Of a stretch of DNA of 64,000 bases, positions 7,035-51,343 are shown in pieces. The notes under the pieces were generated by a model that made no database searches, was not told the origin of the DNA, and worked only from the letters and a program-made list of their open reading frames with translations. Both the position numbers and the translations under genes were made by a program. The DNA comes from Paraphysomonas bandaiensis (taxonomy: Eukaryota > Protista > Chrysophyceae): the NCBI GenBank assembly GCA_965644295.1, contig CBFFRP010000210.1, forward strand, positions 62,001-126,000, read 5' to 3'. Position 1 is the stretch's first letter. Each line of letters opens with the position of its first letter.

Positions 7035-10000
7035 TGTTGAGATCTGAAGATTCTATATACTTGCAATTGAGTGCAGTATTATGTGAGATGCAAGGATCGA
7101 AAGATATATATGTAATTAGTACATTATATTGTGTAGTATGAAACTGAAGTAGAAGTGGGTGACTATACAGGATACGATCACTGAGTGTGTGGTTTGTAGA
7201 CTATAGTAGTAAATGAATGGTGTTGAACACATCGAACACAACTTAGGTTCTTTATCATGTAATGTTTATAATTTCATCTTATCAGTTGAGAATAGTAAAC
7301 CTTAGCAAATAATGTCAACTTCTGTTATGGTAGCGGATGGTAGTTGTAGGGATGGGGAAGATGACAAGAAGCTACGGTTTGACAAGAACCAAGCAGACTA
7401 TTCAGCGAGAAAAATCAAGATGCATCTAATGAAGAAAAACCGAAACCATCTTGGCTTGGAGGACCCGCCAGCCGGAGGAAGGAATTTAGAGTCATGGAGA
7501 GAGCGTAATGATACCTGTGTTAGTACTATTTGGGAGGCTTGCGAGCATGACCCTGATGTGTTGGAGGTAGCCAATCAATATTTGGAGGGGAAGGCAATTT
7601 TACCTGCTGATGATCCTGCTAAGGAGGTGTTATCCAGTGAGCTCCTTCAGACACTGGTTGATAGGTTCAGAGGCGAGATTGGGACTGTATTGGAGAAGAC
7701 TACGGCAGAATACCATTCGTTCAAAATAAGGCCGGGGGAAAAGGTGTCTGTTGGGGTAGATCGACTGAACGGTATAATCCAGAAGCTCATAAAATTGGGA
7801 CAACCGCAGACAGAGGCAAGTAAATTAGCAAAGATAAAAGCAGCGCTGCAGATAGAGGAATTACATGATTTATGGATGTCGGTAGCGATGATGCCTAAAG
7901 CAACAACTACATTTGATTCGGTGAAAGAGGCTTGTGAAGAGTATGACGAGGCTATGACGCAGCTGAAGAAACTAAAGGGAGACAAGTCTGAAGAGATCAA
8001 TTTTACAGCGTCGAAGGAGCCAGTGGTTTGTTCATTTTGTCGGAAGAAGGGACATGTAGCAGCGAATTGTTATGCTAAGGAACGACAAAGAAAAATGGAC
8101 AAGTTCAAAAGAAAAGGGAAGACAAAGGAAAAGGCTTCGAAGAGTGTGCAGCAGCCAGGATCAAAGGATTATACTGGTTGTCATATCTGTGGAGATTTTA
8201 GTCACAAAGCCCGACAGTGCAAGTCGAAAAAACGGAAGAACATAAAAAACCCGGATAATGAGAATCCTCGAAAATCGAACAGGAAATTCGAGACAGAATG
8301 GAAGAAATACGTCAACGACGGAGAGTCGTCGGATGATGAAGCGAATATGTTTGGAGAAGAGGTTTTGCTATCGGTGGATACGTCGGAAGAACCTCGTGTA
8401 TATCTGGACAGTTGTGCAAGTAAAAGACTGTTTATAGTAAAGGATAAAATTGCACTGGAGTCATTTACTCCTGAGTTTGGGGCAATCCAACTAACTAGAA
8501 AGGGTTCTCAATTGGAGACACAGGGAACTGGTACATTCGGGGAATGGAGAGACATCAGAGTTAGTGAAGAAGCGGTGAAGAACATTGTGTCAGGAGGAAT
8601 GCTGAGATCAATGGGATACGGATTACAACTGCTCCGAAAGCCTAAAATCGTGGAATTGGACTCTGGAAACGAGGTGTTGACTGGAGAGTACGATGAGCAT
8701 GGAGGAATGCCGTATGTGGACTTGATGGAGGTGTTAAATCTGCCAAATGTGTCTATGTGCAATCAGATGGAGGAGGTAAATTTGTCGGATAATACAGGAC
8801 AAGATGCGTTGGATCGCTTACATGAGCGTACTGGACATGTCTCGAAATCGAAGTTAATAGAAGCTCACCGACACATGTTATTCAGAGGATCAGGACTACA
8901 ACGACATCACCTTTCGAAGGCAAAGGAGAAGAGTTGCAAGAAACCCCTGTGTAAATGGTGTGCCAAGGCGAAGATAACCAGGCATTCGTTCAAATCACGG
9001 GACAACGAAGAGCTAAGCGCAGTCAGGTTTCTGGAAAGAGTGACAGCGGACATCTCAGTCTACCTCAATTGTGAATCCAGACAAGGGTATAAGTACGTGC
9101 TCCTATTTACGGACGTGTGGCAACAAAGATGATATGGGAATATGGTTTGAGGACTCGAAGCGGAGAGGAGGTGTTCAAATGTCTACGACACTTGTGCGAG
9201 GTCCACTTAGTGAAGTACGAGGGGTGGAACCGTATAGTGGAGTATCATGCCGATGGAGGATCCGAACTTATTAGTCAGCAGATAAGAGAGTATCTGTTGC
9301 AGCGATATGGGACTCGGGTGTCACATACAACACGAGACACGCCAGAGCTCAACGCGGTGTCTGAGAGGAAATTCCGAACAATTGGGGAGATGACACTGAC
9401 GATATTGACGGCATCCGGACTTCCAAAGTCGTTCTGGTTTGATGCTTATCAAACTGCATGTTACATTGTGCGACGAATGCCAACTCGGACGTGGCAAGGA
9501 TGGATGTCTCCATATGAGTGTGTCCCAGGGGGGAGCGTTCCCAGCCTATCGTGGCTACGGAAATGGGGGTGCAAAGCATATGTGCTAACACCCAAGGCCG
9601 ACAGGAGGAAGGACTGGGAGGACAAAGCAATGACAGGTTATTTCATAGGGTATCCAGCTGATCGAAAAGGATACAAGGTGCTAGTGGGGGACACCGTAGT
9701 ACACTCTGTACATGTATTATTTGATGAATCGGTACCTGAGAGGTCTCAGGATTATTATAGAGAGCTGGAGGAGGCTCAAGTGGCTATAGATCCCGAGGCT
9801 CGTCAACCGGGTGAGTTTGAGTATCTTATCGGAAAGCACCATGAGGATGGTGGTCTGCTATACAAGACTAACAGAGTGGTGATAAGGAAGGGACTTATTG
9901 TGGGATACCGGTCGTTGGTTACTGGTAACCAAGTTCAAGTGGAGGATAAAACTCCTATTCATATTGCTGACATCAAGAAGATGACAGAGGATCTTGCGCA

Positions 10001-10628
10001 GAGGGTGGTTAGGGCCAGAGTTACTGACAACCGTGACGGCGGTATCAGCGGAGTGGTGCCACAGCAGTCGGAAAGTGGGCAGGTGCAGCCCCAGGCTGAC
10101 TCAGCATTACCTTCGGGGGAAGGGACCCCTGCCGAGAATCATCCGCACGGCAAACGCGCAAGAACTCCAAGGACGGTAACGAATGTGTCGGTGTTAGGAC
10201 AAATCCATCATTTGAGTGATGAGAGTGATGTGAGTGACCTTTTACAGGAGGCAGACTCAGTGTGGATGTCAGCGGAAGAGTCGACAGTGCCTCAGACACA
10301 TCGTGAGTCCTTGGAGAGTGCCGAGCACAGGGAGTGGAGACGAGCTCGCCGTGTAGAGCGAGAGGGTTTGGCGAAGCGAGATACCATGGAGGTGACTCGT
10401 ATACCGGACGGAGTCGTCCCACTGCAAGCTATTAACACACGTATGGCAATATATTCGTGGTTCTATTGACAAAGGGGATCACTGAGTGTGTGGTTTGTAG
10501 ACTATAGTAGTAAATGAATGGTGTTGAACACATCGAACACAACTTAGGTTCTTTATCATGTAATGTTTATAATTTCATCTTATCAGTTGAGAATAGTAAA
10601 CCTTAGCAAATAATGTCAACTTCTGTTA
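7035..10628 (+). mobile_element. Ty1/copia LTR retrotransposon, internally deleted (RT core, RNase H, PPT and 5' half of the 3' LTR missing)
   Basis: TSD GAGTT at 7030-7034 and 10629-10633. The 5' LTR is 7035-7327 and starts TGTTG. 7176-7327 is identical to 10477-10628. PBS-like TGGTAGC at 7328. Domain order is gag-PR-IN-RT. Confidence 0.92.
7312..10476 (+). pseudogene. Copia gag-pol: two CCHC knuckles, aspartic protease (LDSCAS), HHCC and DDE integrase, truncated RT
   Basis: CSFCRKKGHVAANC, CHICGDFSHKARQC, YLDSCAS, HERTGH...CKWC, ADGGSE...NAVSER, WGCKAY. Frameshift near 9120 within integrase. RT breaks after about 40 aa, followed by a connection remnant KLLTHVWQYIRGSIDKG in another frame. 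Confidence 0.88.
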
Positions 10629-11187
10629 GAGTTATCGAATGAAGCACCAATACATTGGATGGAAGCCATCCAAAGGGGGGAAATCTACTATAAAAGACTG
10701 CACAGATTGAAATGCTCTACACATCGTGAATACTACCATTCAATTATTTCAAAAATTCATTAAATCATCTTTCATTAAATCCACTATTTAAAGGCACAGT
10801 CAACTTTTTTGTGTATTGGTGGACAACAAGTACAGTAAATTTCATTTGATCACACAGTGAATACTCAAAAGCTTTCATCTTCTTAAAGTTTGAAAAAATG
10901 AATGAAATCAATACATCTCCATTCCGACAGTGTGGCCATAGTGGAGAAACGCTGGTATATACCATATAAGCAAACTATTTTCAAACTTGGGAAAAAATTT
11001 TTCCCAAATATTTTCATTAATGATTTCTAGTTGACTATACATATTTTAAGATGAAAAAAGGATATACAACAGCTTGGATGTTGATAAAAGTAAGGTAATA
11101 TTATCAAGCTGTTTTTAGGTTCTTAACAAGTTTATTACTTTATTGTTATTGTTGCATGCAAAATACAATAGACAATACTCATTAAAC

Positions 11188-13315
11188 TTATGATTGCAAG
11201 AAACGCAAACGGTTAATTTCTTTTTTCATTTTGCAGTTATCATCAATTACTGAATTTTGTTGAGCAAGCATAACAAGAGTACCTTCATCAACAAATTTCT
11301 TCAATCCCTTCGTTCTCCTCTTTCGTCGTCTTGATTTATTCTTCTTACTTCTGTAGTCCTCCTCGTCGGCTTCGGAAGTTATTGAATCTTCATCATCATG
11401 AACGCTCCTCTTTCGCGAGCAGTTCGGCTTAGAAGTATCGGCAGGGCGAACTCGTTCTTTGGCAATGAGGGCATCAATTTGTTCCTGTTGATGCCTCACC
11501 ATTTCCGTCAACGATAAAATCGTCTTCTCCTGCTGATCCAGTATCTCACTGCGAACATTGCGAACATTCTCCCTTCCCACTTTCCACTCCTCCTCTACTA
11601 CATCGGACACCAAATAATATATATTATACTACCTTATCAAAACCAGTCTCTTTTTCTACCATTACCCAAGCAATTCCTCCATTTTGGGCCATTCCACGAT
11701 GCTTATTTACAGAAGCACTATAAGGATATCACAGTGCTTGCAATCCCATTTTGGAGGCAAATTTTTTTGAACTCGATTGAGGTGTTTCCTTTTTTCTTTT
11801 CTTCTTCCTCTCCTTCGTGGACACAGGAACCACTACGACTACCTCATCATCATTTTTTGATGTCACCAGCTTCTTCTTTTTAGAAGCCTAGATGATTTTA
11901 CACTGGACCCGTGTACGTGGCGTGCTCCTTCAGCTACTCCGTCTAGATTTATAGTTTCTTTTGGAAGGACAGTTCTGTCCCACGCTTTCATAGGATTTTT
12001 GGTATTGATAGAGATACCTCTAGAAGAGTCATACTGCCATCTATTGGCTTTAATATATGTTTCGAACACTCTAATTCATAAAGTTAAAAGAATTTGTTAT
12101 TACAAATAAACAAGTGGACACAAACAAGTGGACACAAAATATTAATAATAAACTTACTGGGTAAAAAATTCCACATCGTATACAGAATTTAAATCGCAAG
12201 ATAGTTGGTATTTAAGCAACCATCACTGTAAATTTTTAATCCGTACGGCATTCCCGTCGTTAGTCAACAGAGTCCCATCAAGACGAGGACGATCACATCT
12301 TGTCTCCCAAATCTCCCAGAGCATCCAGCCATCCCCTTCAACTGCCTGACTACAAGAAATTATTGATTTGAGGCGAGTGTGACATAACCAACCCCGTCCA
12401 GTCTTCAAATCTACGATGCCGTGGTAATGCTTGTATCCGAATAGTAACGGCGTCGGGTTTGGAATAAGTTGAAAAAATTTCTTTGTTTTTCCGGTAACGT
12501 GGTCTTGGTCATTCACGAAAGCTTCAAAAGCGAGGTCGTATCCTGAAACCACGACGTCGTACCGGCTTAGTCCCTGATAATAACACATATTCATGAATAG
12601 ACAACAGCTTACAAACATACATAACATTCATACATGGTGTATATAGATACATACATACAAACACACATACATACATACATACATACATACATACATACAT
12701 CGTACACACATACATACATCGTACACACATACATACATACATACCTACATACATCGTACATACATATATCGCTATACTCTATGTAGTATACACAGCAGTG
12801 TCTCACCTCAGTATGTAGTACATTGCTTAGCACACCACCAATGGATTTGCCGCAATTATTTACCTTGGCAGAATCATCTTCAGATAGATCTGAATCTTCA
12901 TCCTCATAAAGCTTTCGCAACGATTAATCACTCGTTCATCATCACTGGACTTGTCTTCTTCGGGTACCTCATTAACTGGACTGCTTGAAATTTTTAGCTG
13001 AAAACATAATACACAGACATCACTATATTGAATTAACTGTATTTATATATTTTATGATGACTTACCACTCTCTTTGGAATAGCACGCTGCACAGAGCTTT
13101 GCATAAACGCCGTCAGAACCTTTCTCATTCATTGGGAAAGATGCACCACACCCATCCAATCCAGAACACTCAGTCATTTCAGTCTCTGCTTCGATAGGAT
13201 GGGATTCAACCTCTTCAACCTCCTCATCATTGGAATCGTCGCTTTCATTCACTCCAGAGGTACCCTGTACTCCTTCTTGCAGCGCGTCAACATCAACATG
13301 TGGTTCAGGGATCAT
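11188..13315 (-). pseudogene. Fragmented multi-exon hypothetical gene(s) inside the transposon nest
   Basis: Colinear minus-strand ORF pieces at 13052-13315, about 12790-12960, 12223-12575, 11863-12069 and 11188-11613, separated by intron-like AT/TACA-rich gaps. No recognisable domain. Confidence 0.35.
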
Positions 13316-13894
13316 TGTACAGTACTTGTTTATTGATTGACTGTAAATTGTGTAGAGTATGTATGCATGTATATAAATAATAACACTCTACATGCAACTC
13401 AACATGACTGTGAAGATGGTTTGGAGGTGATGAAAAATCAAATTCAAAAGTCGACAGCTACATCCATGCGCAGCATAACATATACAAAAACACGTACAAA
13501 AAAAATTTGAATTTGACCAAAAACACGCCACAGGAGAATCGAACACGCGTCATGAGTGTGTGGTGAGGACGCGGTGTGCATCCCACTACACCGCAACCAC
13601 ACTGCACGAGCAGTGACTACAACACGCACATCTTGACCATAATACATATGCATCATATACATATGCATCATATTAACACACCATAGATAGATATGTCAGT
13701 AAAGCGTGACAATTAGGATAGTGTTGAGTGGTATAGTCGAGTGCTTACTCGGTCACAGGTTGAATTATAGCTGCCATCATAAGCACTTATTCAGGCCCTC
13801 TTCCAATAAATGCCATCAGCTCTTTCGAGATGACGCAATCTCACAGGTATAGTCGGATCCACTGATAGATGTCTGTATTCGTTCCTGTACTATA

Positions 13895-14591
13895 TATGTA
13901 TGTATATATGGATTCATGGTGATTGAGCGCGGAGTTATTTCTCCTCACTTATGTGAGTTTGATGAATTAATGAGGTGAAACTCCTCAGCGTGCTCCCTCC
14001 CAGGGTTAATGGCAGGTAGATGATTGGCAGCGTAGCTTCTGCTTAGATCGTCCCAGTCCCTGGCTTGGTTGAACCTGTGCTCTCATCATTGAAACTGTAT
14101 ATATAATTGTTCTCATACAATTGTTTATTGATGTTGTCTATGTATGTATATATGGATTCATGGTGATTGAGCGCGGAGTTATTTCTCCTCACTTATGTGA
14201 GTTGATGAATTAATGAGGTGAAACTCCTCAGCGTGCTCCCTCCCAGGGTTAATGGCAGGTAGATGATTGGCAGCGTAGCTTCTGCTTAGATCGTCCCGGT
14301 CCCTGGCTTGGTTGAACCTGTGCTCTCATCATTGAAACTGTATATATAATTGTTCTCATACAATTGTTTATTGATGTTGTCTATGTATGTATATATGGAT
14401 TCATGGTGATTGAGCGCGGAGTTATTTCTCCTCACTTATGTGAGTTGATGAATTAATGAGGTGAAACTCCTCAGCGTGCTCCCTCCCAGGGTTAATGGCA
14501 GGTAGATGATTGGCAGCGTAGCTTCTGCTTAGATCGTCCCAGTCCCTGGCTTGGTTGAACCTGTGCTCTCATCATTGAAACTGTATATATA
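13895..14591 (+). repeat. Tandem array of about 2.9 copies of a 243-244 bp unit with extensive predicted RNA structure
   Basis: GATTCATGG recurs at 13911, 14155 and 14398. Copies differ by one T indel and one A/G substitution. Confidence 0.95.
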
Positions 14592-14687
14592 TTGAAGCAT
14601 TTTCCTTATATATTTTGCTTCTACTGTATTTTACAATTTATGACGTCGACGTTATAGCTAATCCTGCTCTCCGTAGATACTGTAGCC

Positions 14688-16285
14688 TTGGAGGGCCACG
14701 CAGATGCAATTACGAGATCAGCATGTTGCCAGAATATGTGTCTACTCCGAACCCTCGGTTATGAACAAGGAAAGATGTTGGTGTTTGAGTCCCTTAAAGG
14801 TCGAGATTCAATGAATCGCGCAGAACGAAGGGATCACATCCGTCAGATACTAGAGACCTGTATAGTGTCTCGACACTCAGATTCCGGTTATTGCAAAATG
14901 GAATGGAAGATTGGAGACAACTTAAGATGAAGACACGGGTATCTGGCGTATGCAAGGATTGTTTTTGTAATGTGTATGGTGTGTCACCATCACATGTTGA
15001 TATGGTTGTTCGTGAACTCAAAACTGGCACGATAAACTCGTCACAAGTATTCTCATACCACAGTACTTCTCCTCTTGCTGTACTTGCCGGATTGAGAAGA
15101 GTTGCGAAGTCTTTTGGTATTCATTTGACCAAGCGGCAAGTGGCTGCTGCGAAACTACCCAACAGCCCCGTGGTGAGTAGATTTTTAAAATTATATTGGA
15201 CGTGTTGTCTGCATTTGTAATTATATTATGTATAATGTAGTTTATGTGACAGTAATAATGTACTACGTTTAGGTTCTATCTGCATACGGATGGATGCTAG
15301 ATCATTTCAAGCTGGTGGGTGATTATCAACCTAACCTAGGAGGAGAAATCCATTTAGAGCCCCGACATATTGTTGAAATTACAGAGAGTACACGCTGGAC
15401 CTGCAGCACGCTGAGATACCTGCAGTTTCTGTTGATCAATTTGCATCGATTTGGACCAACTGCCTGCCATATGTGAAAATCCGAGAGTTCAAAGCAGTTA
15501 CTGGTAAATGTCAATGCTGTGCTGACCTAAGCACACTGCGACGTACTCACAAGTCACAAATGGACAGGGAGTATGTCACCACGATGCATGCACTGCACCG
15601 CAGTGCATACATGGGGGAACGGGCGGCCTATGCGGAGCGTCGGCACAAAGCGATCATGCAAAAGCGAGTTTTATGTCGTGCATATCAGATGGAATGGCCC
15701 AGAATCATTGCATTCTTCCACATTTTGGGAATCAAAACAGTTGGGGGACAGATAGTCTGCCGCAGCATCTTCAAGGAGTACTTAATCACAATCGAGGAAT
15801 TATCATCATCTACCGTACGTTTCATACAGTTAACAACTGTTCAAATGTGGGATGCATTGTTTTCTAGATACTTTACAGAAAACCATCAACGCGGAGGGGA
15901 AATTGCCGGATACTGTTTTCTATCAAATTGATGGAGGTCCAGAAAACCCAGCGTATTGTTGGTTTGCACTCTGTGAGTTGATTGTAGCACGACGTCTGTG
16001 TAAGCGTTTAGTGTTGACTCGACTAATGGTGGGGCATACGCACGAAGATATTGATTCTAAGTATGGTACTTTGTGGAAGAAAATAAGGTACGACGCAATA
16101 TGAACTCTTACTTTACGTTGTCTTTGTGTTAATATGTATGTCCAGATCCAAATACGTGTACACCCCACAACAGTACAAAGATCACATTGAATCTGCACTG
16201 TCGACAAAAAAATCACGCTGCATTGTGGAAGATCTTTTCGCGATTCCAGACTACAAGAAACTATTGGACGCTCACACAGACAGAC
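14688..16285 (+). pseudogene. Decayed DUF7869-type (Sola-like DDD) transposase with introns and frameshifts
   Basis: Pieces in different frames: VCKDCFCNVYGVS, CQCCADL...H...ERAAYAERR, ISDGMAQNHCILPHF, LPDTVFYQIDGGPEN, and LTRLMVGHTHEDIDSKYG (the GHTHEDID signature). Confidence 0.75.
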
Positions 16286-16289
16286 GGTT

Positions 16290-17308
16290 AAACGCCCAAA
16301 TTAAGGGTGAGAAGACAAGCCAAAAAATAGAGGCTGAGTGGAAGAAGGTTCAAAAACAGTGGAAGCGGATTGGTTTGAGACATGAATCGTTTCATTTGCC
16401 AGATTCAGACCTTTTCAGTCAATATCCAACATTAGTAGAGCTGCGACGGCTAACGCTCCTGAGCATATTTCTTTAGTTTGTTACACCTGCACTTGTCACG
16501 ACAATTGCCCGAGATAGAGATCCTGAGCACATCTCTTTTAACAGAGGAAACTCTGTGCTGTTCACTGTGAGTAAGATATAACAAGATGTGTGCTATTTGG
16601 ATTCGTATTTATGGCGAACAATTCGTGCTTACTGGTGTCCAGAAGAAGGTCCGTCCACTGTGTTCAGGACTGGAATAATACCGAAAAGAGTTCAGAATAA
16701 ATTATCCTACGATTTCGTCGTTTGGCATAGTATTTGCCGAAACATTCACTGCCAACTTTACGTTTGACAAGCTCTACTCTGAAGATGTCTCCTTGCAGTT
16801 TAAGAGTATTCGTAGAGGAATTATTAATCCGAAGCAATTCCTGCGTTGTTGACACGATTGGTGCAGCACGGAGTAGATATGTGGGGAAAATGGAATGGGT
16901 ATAGAACAAAAGAAAGAAGCAAATAGTTGTGCACGCTCATAGGAAAGATGGGAAGCAACACACAGTATTAAGTAATGCGTATACGAGGCGGACAACCAAG
17001 GCCTCGACATCATATATGTATTCCTGTGCGTGATGACTATTACAAGCTGTTTTATGCCTATGACAAATACAACAAGCAAATCAAACAGAGGGTATGACCA
17101 CACAGGGATGGTGGCAATGGGCGTTTGGGTGAGGCGGGAGAGCATAATTTATTTGTTTATGTTTGGTTGTATAATAGAAAACACTGTCAACGCATATCGT
17201 CATATAATGAATGTCGATTCCGAAGATTTTGAGTACTTTGGTTATTGTCAAACTCTAGCAAACGATTTGTATGTGTATGCAAGCACACTCTCTGATAGTA
17301 CTATTTAG
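16290..17308 (+). pseudogene. Decayed piggyBac-like (PGBD-type) transposase, copy 1
   Basis: WKRIGLRHESFHLPD, FVTPALVTTIARD, AIWIRIYGEQ, DDYYKLFYAYDKYNKQIK, FGCIIENTVNAY, LANDLY. Clearly homologous to 18330-19300 on the minus strand. Assignment to piggyBac is by loose motif similarity. Confidence 0.55.
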
Positions 17309-17600
17309 TAGAGTAATACAATAAATTTAATTGATTTGGACGTAAATATATTACTTCTTATAAGTGTGGTTACTGACTGTGGTTAATGAGTGTGGTTAAG
17401 ACCAAATGTAAAAAGGTTTCTTGGAATCGTCATCATTATACAACATTAATATTCTTCATTACCTCTGTCTAAATTATATCAACAATAAACATGAGGTTTT
17501 CATGATGAAATTTTAAAAAAGTCCCAAATTTAGAAATTTTTCCCAAGTTTGAAAAAAGTTTGCTTTATATAACACCAATATTTTGCGCTGATTCTACGTG

Positions 17601-17700
17601 TAGTAACAGTAGTAGTGAATGTCTTATCATTAGCAACAGGCGTGTAAGAGTCAGAGCGAATTTATAGCAAAACAATTTAACTAATGAGTGCTTAACTCTG
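17601..17700 (-). mobile_element. Family B 3' tail joined to a different upstream sequence (possible partner LINE end)
   Basis: The reverse complement CAGAGTTAAGCAC..TTAGTTAAATTGTTTTGCTA..CTGACTCTTACACGCCTGTTGCTAATGATAAGACATTCACTACTAC matches 6610-6697. Confidence 0.7.
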
Positions 17701-18222
17701 TCTAGGCCTGAACGGTATTGGCCGAGCCTCTCTATCCCCTAGATGGCGGGGTTTCTCGTAATCATGTATGGAGTATGCAAATATATTGTGTAGATCTCCT
17801 AACTGGAGATTTCTGCTCTGCAGTATGATGCGATACAGATTGTGCAATAATTGAAGTGGTTAATAGTGTGCAATAGGTGAGATAAACTCGTGTAACGGGT
17901 GAATATAGTTACAAATGAAGTAAATTGAGTTACTGATGTGTGATAATGTAAAATATAGGAGTGATTACTGAACATATGACAAACAGATGTTGCTGAAAAC
18001 TGAGAACAGATGTCATGAATATGTTTTGAAGTGTGTAGATAAATATTTAAAAATTTTTACATGTAAGTGCATTGTGTTCAATAAAGCAAGGTTAAAGTTT
18101 ACGTCTATAGCAAGGTTAACTTCAGTGAAATGTCCAATTCTAACAGTCACCACAAAGAATATACAAAAAAATACGCCGGGATCATTTTAATAAAAATATA
18201 TACGCCTCTTAGTTTAATCAAC

Positions 18223-19589
18223 TTAGACTAAACCATAGTCTGTAACCATAGTCTGTAACCAATGATATAAAGTGGAATTATTACAACACTGAGCAAACCA
18301 ATCACGGTACCCCTCTATTCCATAGCTTCCTTAGATAGAGTATCAGCATGTGTGTACAATTCACTAGCTAACGAGTTACAGAACTATAATAATCGATACT
18401 ATTTGTATCTATCGAACAAATACTACAATACGCATGGAATGTATTTTGCGAACCACAGCCGAACGCAAACGAGCTACACTTTCCTCTTTCGCGTAGATGC
18501 CCTCCACTACCATGCCGATGAGGCCATATCCTCTCTTTAATCTGCGAATTGAATACATCACATGCTGCAAACATCTTACCGTAGTCGGAGCACACAGGCA
18601 CAGAATTGGTGGTAGACTTCGTAGGTGATCTATGATAAGCATTGAACAAGGCGGTTTATTTCTTGCCATCCTTGGTATAAGAATGAACTAGGGGTTCTTT
18701 ACGCTGTTGATTCCACACTCCATTCCACTGTCCTCGCTTATTGACACCTTCACGAACTTCACGAGTGAGTGCTTGGAAGCGCTGTGGGTTCTAAGCTCCA
18801 ATATCTTACTTTATTCCTTGCAAGCCCTTCTCTTGCAGCTTCATCAAGATAATACGAATCGACTATCAAATAAAAATTTTGTTGTCGCAATTTCCATGAA
18901 TCGTATGCCAAGAGAATCAATCCTTGGATAGCAATCCCTAAAGTGGTCTCACTACCATATAAGTTGCTCTCGCAAAGGTCGCGAATGACGTATTACACCT
19001 CTTGGGGCATGTTGTTCTCCATAAATTCGAATCCAAATTGCAAGAGGCTTATATATAGAACACAATGAAAGCAAAATTACTGCTCCACAGTCATATCTCA
19101 AGTCGGCAGGGTCAATATCCTGGGCAATTTTCGTCACAAGAGATACTGTAACAAAACGCACGAATATCTTGAGGAAGCTGACAGTGCGCAAATTAAACGT
19201 AGGTTATCGATCTGCATCAACCGTATCAGGCAGATGGTATGACTCATTGGCCAAATGAATTGGTCTCCAGCGCCCAGTGATCTCTATTTCCTGAGCACGC
19301 TCTGAGCTTCATGTCGCGTCATCTTCATCGTTGCAAAGAGAACCTGATTTGCGCTTTCGAAATGCCATGTCAAACTATGAGTGAATGGGGGATATAATGA
19401 ACTTACCAGCACATTAATTTGACCTGCAATTCGCTGACTCAACACTGTGATTGTGAAGTGTGAAGTGTGGTTCACACTGTCTGATTTCGACTGATTTTAT
19501 GACAGTTATTTTATGTATGAAAATCGACGTTATTTTCAGTTTTTTTTCAGTTTTTTTTCAGTATGGTTGCAGACTATGGTTTAATCTAA
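18223..19589 (-). mobile_element. Decayed piggyBac-like transposase copy 2, bracketed by a 28-bp inverted repeat
   Basis: WRPIHLANESYHLPD, FVTVSLVTKIAQD, AIWIRIYGEQ, DYGKMFAACDVFNSQIK, LASELY. The inverted repeat is 18223-18250 / 19562-19589 with 2 mismatches. Confidence 0.6.
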
Positions 19590-19951
19590 CTAACACTTTA
19601 CTTGGGCACCTCACGGAATGGGTCACTAGTATATTGCAATAGTATTGTTGGACCAGATAAAACCAATAGTAATGATTCATACCTCAATACTATTACGATT
19701 TATTGTTTCCAAGCCCCGGCTGTACAACATGTACCATACATAAAACGGTCTTAACAATATATGATTTTGATTATTGTTATTAGAATACTTACACATAAGA
19801 AAAATATATTTGTAAGAAAGATGGACAATACCAACCCATAGTAAACGCACTTCAGATGCACAATCGCTGCTTGTGAAGCAATTGTCAGTAACAAACTAAT
19901 CGTCACTGCACAACATGAAATCGAATTAAAATAACCAAAACAAACATTAAA

Positions 19952-20673
19952 CTACACAAGACATCTTTCCCACGCCTCCTTATCTTCTTCCCATTCGTCT
20001 CTGGAAATTATACTTGGACAATCTCCACGTGGGGGAACAGTAACATCAACTCCAAGAACCCCGTTCAGATGATCTATCTCATGCTCCAGCAATTCCGAAA
20101 CATCAGAGGTGCAGTTATTCCAATGCTGCGTTTCACCAAACTGATCAATAAATGAAACAGATATCGACTTAGGTCTTTTAACTGCTGTAAGCATATTGGG
20201 ATAACTTAAACAGCCACCTGTCCAAACACGTAAATAAATGATGTGATGCTTTAAAATCATTTCCCCGATCACTTACCCCACATCATAAAAGTCTCATCTG
20301 ACTTATGTGTAATTACTGGATTTATCATCGTTACAGGTCCATCAATATTCACGCAGACAATACGTAGATTATAACCAAATTGTGGGGCAGCTATAGCTCT
20401 TCCAAATCCATATTTGGATCTAAAATCAAGTAGTGTGGCGTGTCCTTCAGCTATGGCCATTTTCACCGTTGGATCATATAGGATTTCATCAATGGTGACT
20501 GACCTGGACGGGGTATTTAATATAGGATCCCCTATACGGCGTATATCAACAGGTGATGTGTGATATGATGTCGTGTTATCAGAGGGATCGATATCCATAA
20601 ATACAGAGCCATAGGACACCATAAATGATATGAATATCATTGATAAGACAACACAATGTGATAACATGTTCAT
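19952..20673 (-). CDS. def: Peptide deformylase-family protein with an N-terminal signal peptide
   Basis: Exons 20673-20277 and 20217-19952 (intron 20218-20276). Motifs GDPIL, GRAIAAPQFG, GGCLS and HEIDH. Confidence 0.88.
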
Positions 20674-31929: not shown

Positions 31930-33591
31930 CTATGAACATGGAGGGTCCTGTGTACGAAGCCACTGCAGTACATCCAACTGACCACCACCTAAAGTAGCAC
32001 TATAAGTCCGTGCATACCAGGGATTCGAAGGGTCCTGTGAACGAAGCCACTGTAGAGCATCCAAGTATCCACCCGCTGCTGCAGTACAACAACTTAATAC
32101 ATTCCAGGGACATGGAGGGTCCTGTGAACGAAGCCATTGCAGTATATACAAGTGTCCACCTCTAGCAGCAGCATTACAAGTTTCTTCATCCCAGGGACAT
32201 GGAGGGTCCTGTGAACGAAGCCATTGCAGAATATGCAAGTGTCCACCTCTAGCAGCAGCAATACAAGTTTCTTCATCCCAGGGACATGGAGGGTCCTGTG
32301 AACGAAGCCATTGCAGTATATACAAGTGTCCACCTCTAGCAGCAGCATTGCAAGTCTCTTCATCCCAGGGACATGGTGGGTCCTGTGAACGAAGCCACTG
32401 CAGAACATTCAAGTGTCCACCCGCTGCTGCAGTACAACAAATTTCTACATTCCAGGTACATGGACATGGAGGGTCCTGTGAACGAAGCCATTGCAGAATA
32501 TGCAAGTGTCCATGTTTAGCAGCACCATTGCAAGTCTCTTCACCCCAGGGACATGGTGGGTCCTGTGAACGAAGCCACTCCAGCACATCCAAGTGTCCAC
32601 GCACTGCAGCAATATTGCAAGTGTCTTCATCCCAGGGACATGGAGGGTCCTCTGAACGAAGCCACTGTAGAATACTCAAGTGTCCACGAGATGCTGCAGA
32701 AAAACAAGTGTCTACATTCCAGGTGCATGGACATGGAGGGTCCTGTGAACGAAGCCACTGTAGAATATTCAAGTTTCCTCTCGTAATAGCAGCTTGACAA
32801 GTCTCTTCATCCCATGGACATGGTGGGTCCTGTAAACGAAGCCACTTCAGAACATCGAAGTATCCATACTCTATAGCAGCATTGCATGTCCGTGCATCCC
32901 ATGGACATGGAGGGTCCTGTGAACGAAGCCACTGTAGAATATTCAAGTATCCACCACTAGCAGCAGCATAACAAGTCAGTCCATCCCAGGGACATGGAGG
33001 GTCCTGTGAACGAAGCCACTGCAGTACATCCAAGTGTCCATTCGCAGCACCCTCAGCGATAGCGGCTTCATCCCAGGGACATGGAGGGTCCTGCGAACGA
33101 AGCCACTGAAGTGCCTCCACGTGTCCACCCCTAGCAGCTTCCATACAAATTTCTTCGTGCCAGGGACATGGAGGGTCCTGTGAACGAAGCCACTGAAGTA
33201 CCTCCACGTGTCCTTCCATAGCAGCACTCTCTATGGGCCAATATATACTTCTGCTACCCCATATGTATGCAGGGTCCCGTGTGTCTGTATGTGCACGTAT
33301 GTATCTCATGATATGCATCATCTGCTGTAGTCTGCCGTGTTTTGCACATCTATACATTAGCAGTGGGTGTGGGCAGCCCATAGCCAGAGCCCATGAGACC
33401 ATTGAGTTGGTCATACAGTAGTGAGATGCATGTGACTGTACTCTCCTCTTGTCAGTGTATACTATATCGTGAAATCTCTTACAAGTCATTATCACTGGAA
33501 GGACAGCCGTGTGTGGGATCATGGAGATGATGATACGAACAACATCATCATTAAGAGCAGATATATGCGACATATATAAACACTGATTCAT
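31930..33591 (-). CDS. F-box-like N-terminus plus 15 ankyrin-like repeats of the WLRSQDPPCPW type
   Basis: LNDDVVRIIISMIP...TCKRFHDIV is F-box-like. Repeats are 27-29 aa: TCxxAAxxGHLxILQWLRSQDPPCPW. Intronless. Confidence 0.85.
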   Translation of the reverse strand: MNQCLYMSHISALNDDVVRIIISMIPHTAVLPVIMTCKRFHDIVYTDKRRVQSHASHYCMTNSMVSWALAMGCPHPLLMYRCAKHGRLQQMMHIMRYIRAHTDTRDPAYIWGSRSIYWPIESAAMEGHVEVLQWLRSQDPPCPWHEEICMEAARGGHVEALQWLRSQDPPCPWDEAAIAEGAANGHLDVLQWLRSQDPPCPWDGLTCYAAASGGYLNILQWLRSQDPPCPWDARTCNAAIEYGYFDVLKWLRLQDPPCPWDEETCQAAITRGNLNILQWLRSQDPPCPCTWNVDTCFSAASRGHLSILQWLRSEDPPCPWDEDTCNIAAVRGHLDVLEWLRSQDPPCPWGEETCNGAAKHGHLHILQWLRSQDPPCPCTWNVEICCTAAAGGHLNVLQWLRSQDPPCPWDEETCNAAARGGHLYILQWLRSQDPPCPWDEETCIAAARGGHLHILQWLRSQDPPCPWDEETCNAAARGGHLYILQWLRSQDPPCPWNVLSCCTAAAGGYLDALQWLRSQDPSNPWYARTYSATLGGGQLDVLQWLRTQDPPCS

Positions 33592-47065: not shown

Positions 47066-47095
<30 letters not shown>

Positions 47096-47507
47096 CATAC
47101 ATACATACATACATACATACATACATACATACATACATACATACATACATACATACATACATACATACATACATACATACATACATACATACATACATAC
47201 ATACATACATACATACATACATACATACCTACCTACCTACCTACCTACCTACCTACCTACATACATACATACATACATACATACATACATACATACATAC
47301 ATACATACATACATACATACATACATACATACATACATACATACATACATACATACATACATACATACATACATACATACATACATACATACATACATAC
47401 ATACATACATACATACATACATACATACATACATACATACATACATACATACATACATACATACATACATACATACATACATACATACATACATACATAC
47501 ATACATA
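47066..47507 (+). repeat. (TACA)n microsatellite with an internal (CTAC)n block
   Basis: Read directly; lies between the divergent P450 and 47896 genes. Confidence 0.98.
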
Positions 47508-47642
47508 GCTGTATACTGTACTCCAATTATACAGCAATGACTACAAGAGCACTCTGACTGCAGGACATTTCCAGGATGTGTATTCTTATATAGAAATATC
47601 TATTCACTGTCCAATCAAATTATAGGCAGTCAGCATCACTTT

Positions 47643-50742: not shown

Positions 50743-51061
50743 GTATGTATGTATGTATGTATGTATGTATGTATGTATGTATGTATGTATGTATGTATGT
50801 ATGTATGTATGTATGTATGTATGTATGTATGTATGTATGTATGTATGTATGTATGTATGTATGTATGTATGTATGTATGTATGTATGTATGTATGTATGT
50901 ATGTATGTATGTATGTATGTATGTATGTATGTATGTATGTATGTATGTATGTATGTATGTATGTATGTATGTATGTATGTATGTATGTATGTATGTATGT
51001 ATGTATGTATGTATGTATGTATGTATGTATGTATGTATGTATGTATGTATGTATGTATGTG

Positions 51062-51093
<32 letters not shown>

Positions 51094-51343
51094 TGTATGT
51101 ATGTATGTATGTATGTATGTATGTATGTATGTATGTATGTATGTATGTATGTATGTATGTATGTATGTATGTATGTATGTATGTATGTATGTATGTATGT
51201 ATGTATGTATGTATGTATGTATGTATGTATGTATGTATGTATGTATGTATGTATGTATGTATGTATGTATGTATGTATGTATGTATGTATGTATGTATGT
51301 ATGTATGTATGTATGTATGTATGTATGTATGTATGTATGTATG
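50743..51343 (-). repeat. (TACA)n/(GTAT)n microsatellite, about 600 bp
   Basis: Fills most of the space between the divergent WD40 and MFS start codons. Confidence 0.98.

What the first reader, a model, noticed from the sequence alone, without database searches (positions are those of the whole stretch)
13895..14591. Triple tandem 243-bp unit folding into a tRNA-like cloverleaf plus a long hairpin, directly upstream of a transposase
Seen: each unit has a GC-balanced core of about 185 nt separated by an AT-rich spacer. On the + strand GAGCGCG/CGTGCTC closes four arms: GAG-TTATTT-CTC, CTCAC-TTAT-GTGAG, TTGA-TGAA-TTAA and TGAGG-TGAAACT-CCTCA (5-bp stem, 7-nt loop, T-arm-like). A second domain follows (CCAGGG/CCCTGG, GATGAT/ATCGTC, GCAG/CTGC). 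The core ends also pair (ATGGTGA..GAGCGCGG with CTGTGCTC.TCATCAT), and this competes with the cloverleaf stem, so two alternative folds are possible. Several helices use G-U pairs that work only on the + strand, pointing to RNA-level selection. It matches no tRNA, snRNA or ribozyme I can confirm. Inference: a transposon-encoded structured ncRNA array (processing signal, switch, or guide/scaffold RNA). This is the best candidate here for an undescribed system.
Basis: partly seen in the sequence, partly recalled or inferred. Interest (0 to 1): 0.78.

Follow-up and report, generated by a model that had tools for sequence, protein, structure and literature searches.

The report
Tandem promoter-exon repeats inside dead transposon
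The three 243-bp repeats are real, but they are best read as a triplicated start region (AT-rich promoter-like spacer, probable first mini-exon, start of the first intron) of the transposase gene of a dead two-gene DNA transposon, which is an ordinary transposon-internal minisatellite and not a new structured RNA.

Summary
Nothing supports a tRNA-like or other structured RNA:
- There are no Rfam or tRNA hits.
- The cloverleaf fold lies 23 kcal/mol above the unit's MFE.
- Both strands fold equally well against shuffles.
- The unit exists only 7 times, in three 98%-identical paralogous loci. No homologue turned up in the genome or in 100 related loci, so covariation cannot be tested (39 of 40 pairs are invariant).

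The array sits in the middle of a 6.6-kb TIR-bounded element (10968-17565, TAT duplication). It lies between a minus-strand helper gene and a frameshifted, truncated DUF7869 transposase gene.

Exon 1 of the transposase has no ATG before its conserved N-terminal motif. Its acceptor (14675-76) matches, in position and phase, that of a 72%-identical metagenome relative. The only good ATG + phase-1 GTGAGT donor upstream lies inside each repeat unit.

Relatives carry unrelated tandem arrays at the same place. The scan had already noted central arrays in other DUF7869 elements of this genome.

Verdict: a transposon-internal minisatellite that duplicates the transposase's 5' module. Low interest.

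The parts
10968..10999 (+). Left terminal inverted repeat of the host element (starts AAGCAAAC). The TAT target-site duplication lies at 10965-10967.
   Evidence: Inverted repeat I2: 32 nt, 94% complementary to 17534-17565. Flanks were read. The left 648 bp is present in >=10 copies at 97-100% identity in the genome.
11188..13315 (-). Divergently oriented helper gene of unknown function, with several exons. The putative first exon has its ATG at 13315.
   Evidence: tblastn: the minus-strand gene upstream of the 72%-identical transposase in L037 matches window 12564-12163 (46% identity, E 1e-38), 12075-11983 and 11719-11633. No Pfam domain was found. The position of the first exon is inferred.
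13465..13653 (.). Copy of a dispersed ~189-bp high-copy repeat inside the intergenic region. Its minus strand looks tRNA-derived. It is not part of the array.
   Evidence: >=30 copies at 90-96% identity in the genome, several of them next to other DUF7869 loci and at contig starts. ARAGORN calls no tRNA.
13895..14591 (+). Tandem array of 2.9 units of 243 bp: units 13895-14138, 14139-14381 and 14382-14591.
   Evidence: TRF, the repeat finder D6/D9, alignment A1. The same unit occurs 1.9x at G000:C104:41561-42019 (-) and 1.9x at C192:28271-28722 (+), and nowhere else.
14341..14349 (+). TATATATAA in the AT-rich spacer, 54-62 nt before the unit's ATG. It is also present at 14098-14106, and a TATATATAT lies at 14584-14592. 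This is a candidate TATA box.
   Evidence: Read from the sequence. Promoter function is inferred, not tested.
14403..14439 (+). Putative first coding exon of the transposase: ATG + 12 codons + 1 nt, peptide MVIERGVISPHL. It is followed by a GTGAGT donor at 14440. Duplicate copies lie at 13916-13952 and 14160-14196.
   Evidence: It is the top-scoring ATG + phase-1 donor within 1.3 kb upstream of the acceptor. Such a combination arises in 2.5% of shuffles. An alternative mini-exon, ATG GCA G|GTAGAT at 14495, also lies inside the unit.
14440..14676 (+). Putative intron 1 (237 nt from the last unit's donor), with a CTAAT branch-like motif at 14658-14662, a pyrimidine tract, and the AG acceptor at 14675-14676.
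   Evidence: The acceptor is at the same codon position and phase (1) as the acceptor of L037 at 2890. In both, a split codon plus 7 codons precede the conserved ADA(I/V)TR..CC motif.
14677..16310 (+). DUF7869 transposase gene remnant: exon 1 14677-15172, exon 2 15273-16087, exon 3 from 16146. It is frameshifted several times and cut off at 16310.
   Evidence: Pfam PF25273, E 1e-14 here and 2e-21 in the intact C104 copy. Frameshifts were seen by tblastn against the C104 exons. The copy is 97.8-98.1% identical to the C104 and C192 copies.
16314..17405 (.). Unrelated ~1.1-kb dispersed repeat that replaces the 3' part of the transposase gene.
   Evidence: >=25 copies at 82-96% identity in the genome. 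The C104 copy instead continues with an open exon 3.
17534..17565 (-). Right terminal inverted repeat (ends GTTTGCTT). The TAT duplication lies at 17566-17568.
   Evidence: The right ~160 bp is present in several copies.

Best explanation
The array is the central minisatellite of a dead two-gene DUF7869 cut-and-paste transposon (window 10968-17565).

It lies in the region between a minus-strand helper gene and the plus-strand transposase gene. Each 243-bp unit is a duplicate of the transposase gene's 5' module:
- an AT-rich spacer with a TATA-like motif;
- a probable 37-nt first coding exon (ATG + 12 codons);
- a consensus GTGAGT splice donor;
- the first ~145 nt of intron 1.

Splicing from any unit's donor to the single acceptor at 14676 would give the same message.

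The duplication most likely arose by unequal exchange or slippage between the TA/TATG-rich stretches that bound the unit. Copy number has since changed among paralogues (3, 2, 2).

What is shown: the array, its place inside the element, the two-gene layout, the need for an upstream ATG exon, and the recurrence of arrays at this place in relatives.

What is inferred: the exact first exon, and that while the element was alive the repeats acted at the DNA level as multiplied promoter and first-exon cassettes (as mouse L1 monomers do), not as a structured RNA.
For: Place in the element:
- TIRs plus a TAT duplication bound 10968-17565.
- The helper gene is homologous to the gene upstream of the 72%-identical transposase in L037.
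- The transposase carries a DUF7869 domain.
- The array is about 2.9 kb from either end.

First exon:
- The exon-1 frame has no ATG before the conserved ADA(I/V)TR..CC motif, either here or in L037.
- The acceptors are at the same codon and in the same phase.
- The best ATG + phase-1 donor is inside each unit, with a chance rate of 2.5%.
- L037 has an unduplicated short exon 0 with a CAG|GTTAGT phase-1 donor.
- In L045 the repeated 332-bp unit also contains the candidate ATG.

Family pattern:
- Tandem-repeat coverage peaks at 12-18% between -1250 and -750 from the exon-2 start. It is 0-2% in the gene and 5-7% further upstream.
- 5 of the 7 closest relatives with enough upstream DNA carry an array there.
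- Unit sequences are unrelated between lineages, and no k-mer is shared beyond what shuffles give.
- The L039/L042 units carry consensus TATATAAG boxes.
- In L042 and L047 the array lies between divergent ORFs.

Minisatellite behaviour:
- Copy number is 2.9, 1.9 and 1.9 in the three loci.
- Units are 99-100% alike, while the paralogues are 97.8-98.1% alike outside the array.
- No reading frame stays open through the unit.

Analogy: mouse L1 5'UTR monomers are tandem repeats with promoter activity (PMC9022269).
Against: - The first exon, the splice junction and promoter activity are therefore all inferred.
- The ATG of one C192 unit is GTG.
- The first unit lacks the upstream TATATATAA spacer.
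- The window copy is a pseudogene, so no present function is implied.
- L036 and L037, the closest relatives, have no array, so an array is not required.
- The C104 copy could not be followed to its ends: its contig stops 283 nt upstream of the array, and the window's right end is not found in it.
- Enrichment of arrays at this position is only about 2-3-fold over other non-coding flanks.
Confidence: 0.6

Rival explanations
1. A functionless young minisatellite: a neutral tandem duplication in an accessible AT-rich intergenic stretch, with no effect on expression. The ATG/donor coincidence may be real, but duplicating it has no consequence.
For: The units are 99-100% identical, so the duplication is very recent. 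The host copies are dead or truncated. The genome is full of TACA/TATG microsatellites that could drive slippage. The closest relatives, L036 and L037, lack an array.
Against: Arrays recur at the same relative place in many lineages with unrelated units. This suggests either a strong local mutational bias or a benefit to the element.
Confidence: 0.22
2. An array of DNA binding sites for the transposase or the helper protein. The repeated CTCCTCA(C/G) / (C/G)TGAGG motifs, in alternating orientation, would be the sites. The array would regulate the two divergent genes or help assemble a transposition complex.
For: CCTCA/TGAGG occurs 3 times per unit against 0.38 expected (a post hoc test). Both strands fold equally well, as expected of DNA-level palindromes. 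The L039/L042 units are also strongly palindromic on both strands.
Against: The array is about 2.9 kb from both termini and is absent from the ends, unlike transposase-binding subterminal repeats. No motif is shared among the arrays of relatives. The helper protein has no recognisable DNA-binding domain in Pfam.
Confidence: 0.1
3. One reading: each unit encodes a structured RNA (cloverleaf plus hairpin, possibly switching folds) that acts as a processing signal, switch or guide for the transposon. A weaker form: the CUCAC-UUAU-GUGAG hairpin sequesters the 5' splice site and so gates transposase splicing.
For: All the stems exist. The unit folds somewhat better than shuffles, z about -2.2 to -2.9. 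The two substitutions that fall in helices keep pairing through G-U. If exon 0 is real, the region is transcribed as pre-mRNA.
Against: There is no Rfam or tRNA match. The minus strand scores as well or better. The cloverleaf is 23 kcal/mol above the MFE. There is zero covariation. Relatives have unrelated arrays with periods from 45 to 460 bp, most of which do not fold better than shuffles.
Confidence: 0.06
4. Assembly artefact: the true locus holds one unit or a different number of units.
For: Metagenome contigs of relatives often start inside their arrays (L040, L048 and L052), which shows that assemblers struggle with these arrays.
Against: The three window units differ at two positions. 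Two other loci independently carry two units each, with their own variants.
Confidence: 0.02

Closest known systems
Tandem repeats inside DNA transposons (e.g. the Tetris foldback element of Drosophila virilis, PMC4079207, and the tandem-repeat-containing MITE DTC84 of Donax trunculus, PMC3879986)
   Same: A short array of 100-250-bp units lies inside the boundaries of a TIR element. Copy number varies between copies, and the units are homogenised within a locus.
   Different: Here the array is neither in the TIRs nor in the core of a non-autonomous element. It sits at the 5' end of the transposase gene, between two divergent genes, and the unit seems to include the first coding exon. It has not spread as a satellite: there are only 7 units in the genome.
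Mouse LINE-1 5'UTR monomers (PMC9022269)
   Same: Tandem ~200-bp units lie directly upstream of the element's own ORF. Number and sequence vary between subfamilies. This is the proposed working analogy: multiplied promoter modules.
   Different: L1 is a retrotransposon with an internal promoter, and its monomers are non-coding with measured promoter activity. Here the host is a cut-and-paste DNA transposon, the unit appears to contain an ATG mini-exon and a splice donor, and no activity has been measured.
Two-gene DUF7869 (Sola1/Zator-like, per earlier scan notes) transposons of this genome with AAG...CTT ends and 3-bp duplications
   Same: DUF7869 transposase, a divergent helper gene, TIRs starting with AAG, a 3-bp (TAT) duplication, and a tandem array between the two genes.
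   Different: This copy is decayed: the transposase has frameshifts, its 3' part is replaced by a 1.1-kb repeat, and a 189-bp repeat lies in the intergenic region. The superfamily assignment (Sola1 or Zator) was not tested here.
tRNA and tRNA-like structures; transposon-encoded guide RNAs (IS110 bridge RNA, IS200/605 omega RNA)
   Same: A stem-rich sequence next to a transposase gene.
   Different: No tRNA or Rfam model matches. The junction has four arms. There is no conservation of sequence or structure among relatives of the transposase. The host is a eukaryotic DDE/DDD-type element, for which no guide RNA is known (from general knowledge).

Membership tests
tRNA / tRNA-like element | Detected by a tRNA finder or by the Rfam tRNA covariance model | tested here: not met
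   ARAGORN finds 0 genes in the window. Rfam cmscan at E<=1 over 10000-20000 gives no tRNA or other family on the array.
tRNA / tRNA-like element | Cloverleaf of an acceptor stem plus three arms as the favoured fold | tested here: not met
   The proposed closing stem encloses four arms. In the full core this fold scores -39.9 against an MFE of -63.0 kcal/mol. Only when the 70-nt piece is excised does a three-hairpin version become the MFE.
Conserved structured ncRNA of the transposon family | Homologues next to related transposases, with covarying base pairs | tested here: not met
   blastn and nhmmer and covariance model R1 find only the 7 near-identical copies. 39 of 40 pairs are invariant and there are 0 compensatory changes.
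Conserved structured ncRNA of the transposon family | Strand-specific excess of folding energy | tested here: not met
   z is -2.2/-1.9 for the core, -2.85/-2.71 for the unit and -3.2/-5.2 for the cloverleaf piece, plus strand first and minus strand second.
Transposon-internal minisatellite | The array lies inside the element's boundaries | tested here: met
   The TIRs are at 10968-10999 and 17534-17565, with a TAT duplication. The array is at 13895-14591.
Transposon-internal minisatellite | Copy number varies among copies of the element, and units are homogenised | tested here: met
   There are 2.9, 1.9 and 1.9 units in the three loci. Units are 99-100% alike, and the indel variant is locus-specific.
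Subterminal transposase-binding repeats (CACTA/En-Spm style) | Repeats within a few hundred bp of the termini, usually at both ends | tested here: not met
   The array is about 2.9 kb from the left end and about 3.0 kb from the right end. No unit lies near either end or in inverted orientation.
Promoter monomer array (mouse L1-like) | Tandem units immediately upstream of the element's ORF | tested here: met
   The array ends 85 nt before the exon-1 acceptor. Relatives' arrays end 140-410 bp before the ORF.
Promoter monomer array (mouse L1-like) | Units have promoter activity | not testable with these tools
   Only TATA-like motifs were seen.
Two-gene DUF7869 TIR transposon | A DUF7869 transposase, a divergent helper gene, TIRs and a 3-bp duplication | tested here: met
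   PF25273 hits; helper homology to L037 at E 1e-38; a 32-nt TIR and a TAT/TAT duplication.

The most novel reading that the evidence does not exclude
The unit is a self-contained promoter + first-exon cassette whose transcript folds so that the 5' splice site (GUGAG) is held in the CUCAC-UUAU-GUGAG hairpin. On this reading, RNA structure in a lineage-specific leader gates splicing, and hence production, of the transposase, and the tandem copies tune this. That would be a private, fast-evolving RNA control element of a protist DNA transposon.
Probability: 0.06. Interest if true: 0.55.

Novelty: new member of a known kind. Interest (0 to 1): 0.22.

Why it matters
The candidate 'undescribed RNA system' dissolves. 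What remains is an ordinary feature of mobile DNA: a short tandem array inside a transposon.

Two points have modest value:
- A widespread protist lineage of two-gene DUF7869 transposons, a domain for which no paper was found, repeatedly builds tandem arrays in the region between its two divergent genes.
- In at least this subfamily the repeated unit seems to include the transposase's first exon and splice donor. This parallels the promoter monomers of mouse L1 in a cut-and-paste element.

The result also warns gene annotators that the true start codon of these transposases may sit in a mini-exon inside a repeat.

Tried and rejected
- Coding repeat: 243 = 81 codons, but every frame has stops, with the longest open stretch 49 codons. 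Rejected.
- Known RNA family or tRNA: no match.
- Subterminal repeats: this was my first guess. I rejected it once the TIRs at 10968 and 17565 were checked.
- TIRs for the 2.8-kb block shared with C104 and C192: none found. That block is only the part of the element shared by the three loci.
- Divergent unit copies: sought with blastn and nhmmer and with a covariance model. None found.
- A motif shared among the arrays of relatives: none beyond shuffles. My unit-versus-unit Smith-Waterman test was too strict, because it missed the L042-L045 similarity that is visible by eye. The number of independent array families is therefore about 11, not 13.
- My first candidate for L037's exon 0 (MSVDLVVSPTAEN, chosen for a V-[IV]-S-P resemblance) has a poor donor. 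It was replaced by the better candidate at 2468-2498.
- L020, L035, L036 and L038 gave no usable 5' ends.
- PDB sequence search of exon 2: no hit.
- Viral-contig scan: no hit.
- The large protein searches were not used, because the family was already identified.

Full report
OBSERVATION

TRF reports one array at 13895-14591: period 243, 2.9 copies, 99% matches. The three units differ only by a T indel (unit 1) and an A/G (unit 2).

Each unit is a ~188-nt core plus a ~55-nt AT-rich spacer.

The window comes from a 62.5-Mb assembly. Earlier scan notes describe it as a marine stramenopile or diatom. The many TACA/TATG microsatellites and spliceosomal-type introns fit a eukaryote.

IS IT A STRUCTURED RNA?

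- Known families. ARAGORN finds no tRNA. Rfam at E<=1 finds nothing on the array; the only hit in 10-20 kb is a mir-297 match on a TACA microsatellite.
- Energy.
- Comparison with shuffles. Against dinucleotide shuffles the core gives z -2.2 on the plus strand and -1.9 on the minus strand. The whole unit gives -2.85 and -2.71. The excised 70-nt cloverleaf piece gives -3.2 on the plus strand but -5.2 on the minus strand. There is a mild excess of self-complementarity, but it is symmetric. That is the signature of inverted motifs in DNA (CTCCTCA(C/G) and its complement occur four times), not of selection on one RNA strand.
- Coding. No frame is open through the unit.
- Copies. The unit occurs only seven times in the genome: three here, two at C104:41561-42019 (-) and two at C192:28271-28722 (+). 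blastn and nhmmer agree.
- Covariation. Among the seven copies 39 of 40 pairs never vary, one varies G-C to G-U, and none covaries. Covariation is therefore untestable, and the RNA reading has no positive evidence.

WHAT SURROUNDS IT

Downstream lies a DUF7869 (PF25273) transposase-like gene.

The three loci share about 2.7 kb at 97.8-98.1% identity:
- The C104 copy is the least decayed, with exon ORFs of 185, 276 and 433 aa.
- The window copy has several frameshifts.
- The window and C192 copies are cut off at window 16310 by an unrelated ~1.1-kb dispersed repeat (16314-17405), which has at least 25 copies in the genome.

It is 32 nt long and 94% complementary. It starts AAGCAAAC, ends GTTTGCTT, and is flanked by TAT on both sides. 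The left 648 bp and the right ~160 bp recur in many copies, including short deletion derivatives in contigs C95, C593 and C589.

The left arm carries minus-strand ORFs. These are homologous to the minus-strand gene that lies upstream of a 72%-identical transposase in metagenome contig L037: 46% identity over 131 aa, E 1e-38.

So the host is a 6.6-kb two-gene TIR element, as other notes of this scan describe for DUF7869 elements of this genome. The array sits in its middle, about 2.9 kb from either end, between the two divergent genes. This rules out subterminal transposase-binding repeats.

THE UNIT PROBABLY CONTAINS THE FIRST EXON

The exon-1 reading frame opens only 26 codons before its first ATG (14736). 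Yet the residues before that ATG, ADA(I/V)TR..CC, are conserved in L037, L039, L041 and L042.

In the window the frame is preceded by CTAAT, a pyrimidine tract and AG (14658-14676). L037 has the same arrangement, CTAAT ... ttgttgcag at 2890. In both sequences the acceptor splits a codon in phase 1, exactly seven codons before ADA. An upstream ATG exon is therefore required.

I scanned 1.3 kb upstream for donors with an in-frame phase-1 ATG. The best candidate is ATG (14403) + 12 codons + T | GTGAGT, present in every unit (also at 13916 and 14160). The only other candidate, ATG GCA G|GTAGAT at 14495, is also inside the unit. A combination of this quality occurs in 2.5% of shuffles of the same stretch.

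L037 has an unduplicated ten-codon exon 0 with a CAG|GTTAGT phase-1 donor, 392 nt before its acceptor.

On this reading:
- the rest of the core is the beginning of intron 1;
- the AT-rich spacer, with TATATATAA 54-62 nt before the ATG, is a candidate core promoter.

All of this is inference from sequence.

THE FAMILY PATTERN

The search for related loci returned 80 metagenome loci that encode relatives of exon 2 at 21-77% identity.

TRF on these loci and on the other DUF7869 loci of the genome shows tandem arrays with periods of 45-460 bp and 2-10 copies at the same relative position:
- Tandem-repeat coverage peaks at 12-18% between -1250 and -750 from the exon-2 start. It is 0-2% inside the gene and 5-7% further upstream.
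- Five of the seven closest relatives with enough upstream DNA have an array there (L039, L042, L045, L047, L051). These arrays end 140-410 bp before the ORF.
- Three other subfamilies in this genome do too (L022, L026, L027).

Unit sequences are unrelated between lineages, apart from the close sets L039/L042(/L045) and L089/L091. No k-mer is shared beyond chance. Most units do not fold better than shuffles.

The L039/L042 units carry consensus TATATAAG boxes, and the 332-bp unit of L045 contains the candidate start codon. In L042 and L047 the array lies between divergent ORFs.

A feature conserved in place but not in sequence, length or fold fits promoter-region minisatellites. It does not fit a conserved RNA.

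MECHANISM AND ODDS

- Most likely (0.6): a tandem duplication of the transposase's promoter, first exon and intron start, made by unequal exchange between the TA-rich unit borders and still changing in copy number. While the element was active it acted, if at all, as multiplied promoter cassettes, as mouse L1 monomers do (PMC9022269).

NOVELTY

Tandem repeats inside DNA transposons are well known (PMC4079207, PMC3879986). The scan has already noted central arrays in other DUF7869 elements of this genome. No paper mentions DUF7869, so the family itself is poorly described, but this array is an ordinary member of a known kind.

LIMITS

- Further genome stretches could not be fetched.
- The ends of the C104 element are unknown.
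- The superfamily assignment (Sola1 or Zator) was not tested here.

Noticed in passing
window 13465-13653: A ~189-bp high-copy repeat with >=30 copies at 90-96% identity. Its minus strand looks tRNA-derived (GGTTCGATTC-like T-arm), but ARAGORN does not call it. Copies lie within 1-3.5 kb of at least six other DUF7869 loci (C93, C132, C346, C400 twice, C538), and many sit at contig starts. By a rough count this association is far above chance. It could be a SINE that these transposons target, or one that targets them.
   Followed up: partly
window 16314-17405: A ~1.1-kb dispersed repeat with >=25 copies at 82-96% identity. It replaces the 3' part of the transposase gene here and, for its first 160 bp, in the C192 copy. 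Its nature is unknown.
   Followed up: partly
G000 C95:13755-16135, C593:2564-3653, C589:18546-20186: Short (~2.4 kb) deletion derivatives of the window's element. They join its left ~730 bp to window 16092-17565, so a non-autonomous family descends from this already-broken master copy.
   Followed up: partly
window 11188-13315 (-) and L037:29-1676 (-): A helper gene with no Pfam domain is conserved (46% identity over 131 aa) between this element and a metagenome relative. The upstream ORFs of other subfamilies (L042/L039, L047) show no similarity to it.
   Followed up: partly
window 7176-7327 and 10477-10628: Two identical 152-bp direct repeats 3.3 kb apart bracket ORFs with a retroviral SH3-like integrase domain and a zinc finger. 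This is probably a young, short LTR element that abuts the transposon's left end.
   Followed up: no
window 31936-33213: A large array of 87-bp units (14.6 copies, 78% matches), with a 267-bp higher-order period. Since 87 = 29 codons, it may be a coding repeat.
   Followed up: no
window 47066-47516 and 50743-51343: Two long, nearly perfect (TACA)n / (GTAT)n microsatellites form a 451-nt inverted pair around 3.2 kb.
   Followed up: no
L039:1703-1924, L042:2501-2796, L045:97-977: The arrays of three related metagenome elements are built from a homologous ~45-50-nt sub-repeat. It alternates between a TATATAAG form and a TATGT(A/G)AG form, that is, between a TATA-box-like and a splice-donor-like sequence. 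The L039 unit is strongly palindromic (z -4.0 and -5.3).
   Followed up: partly
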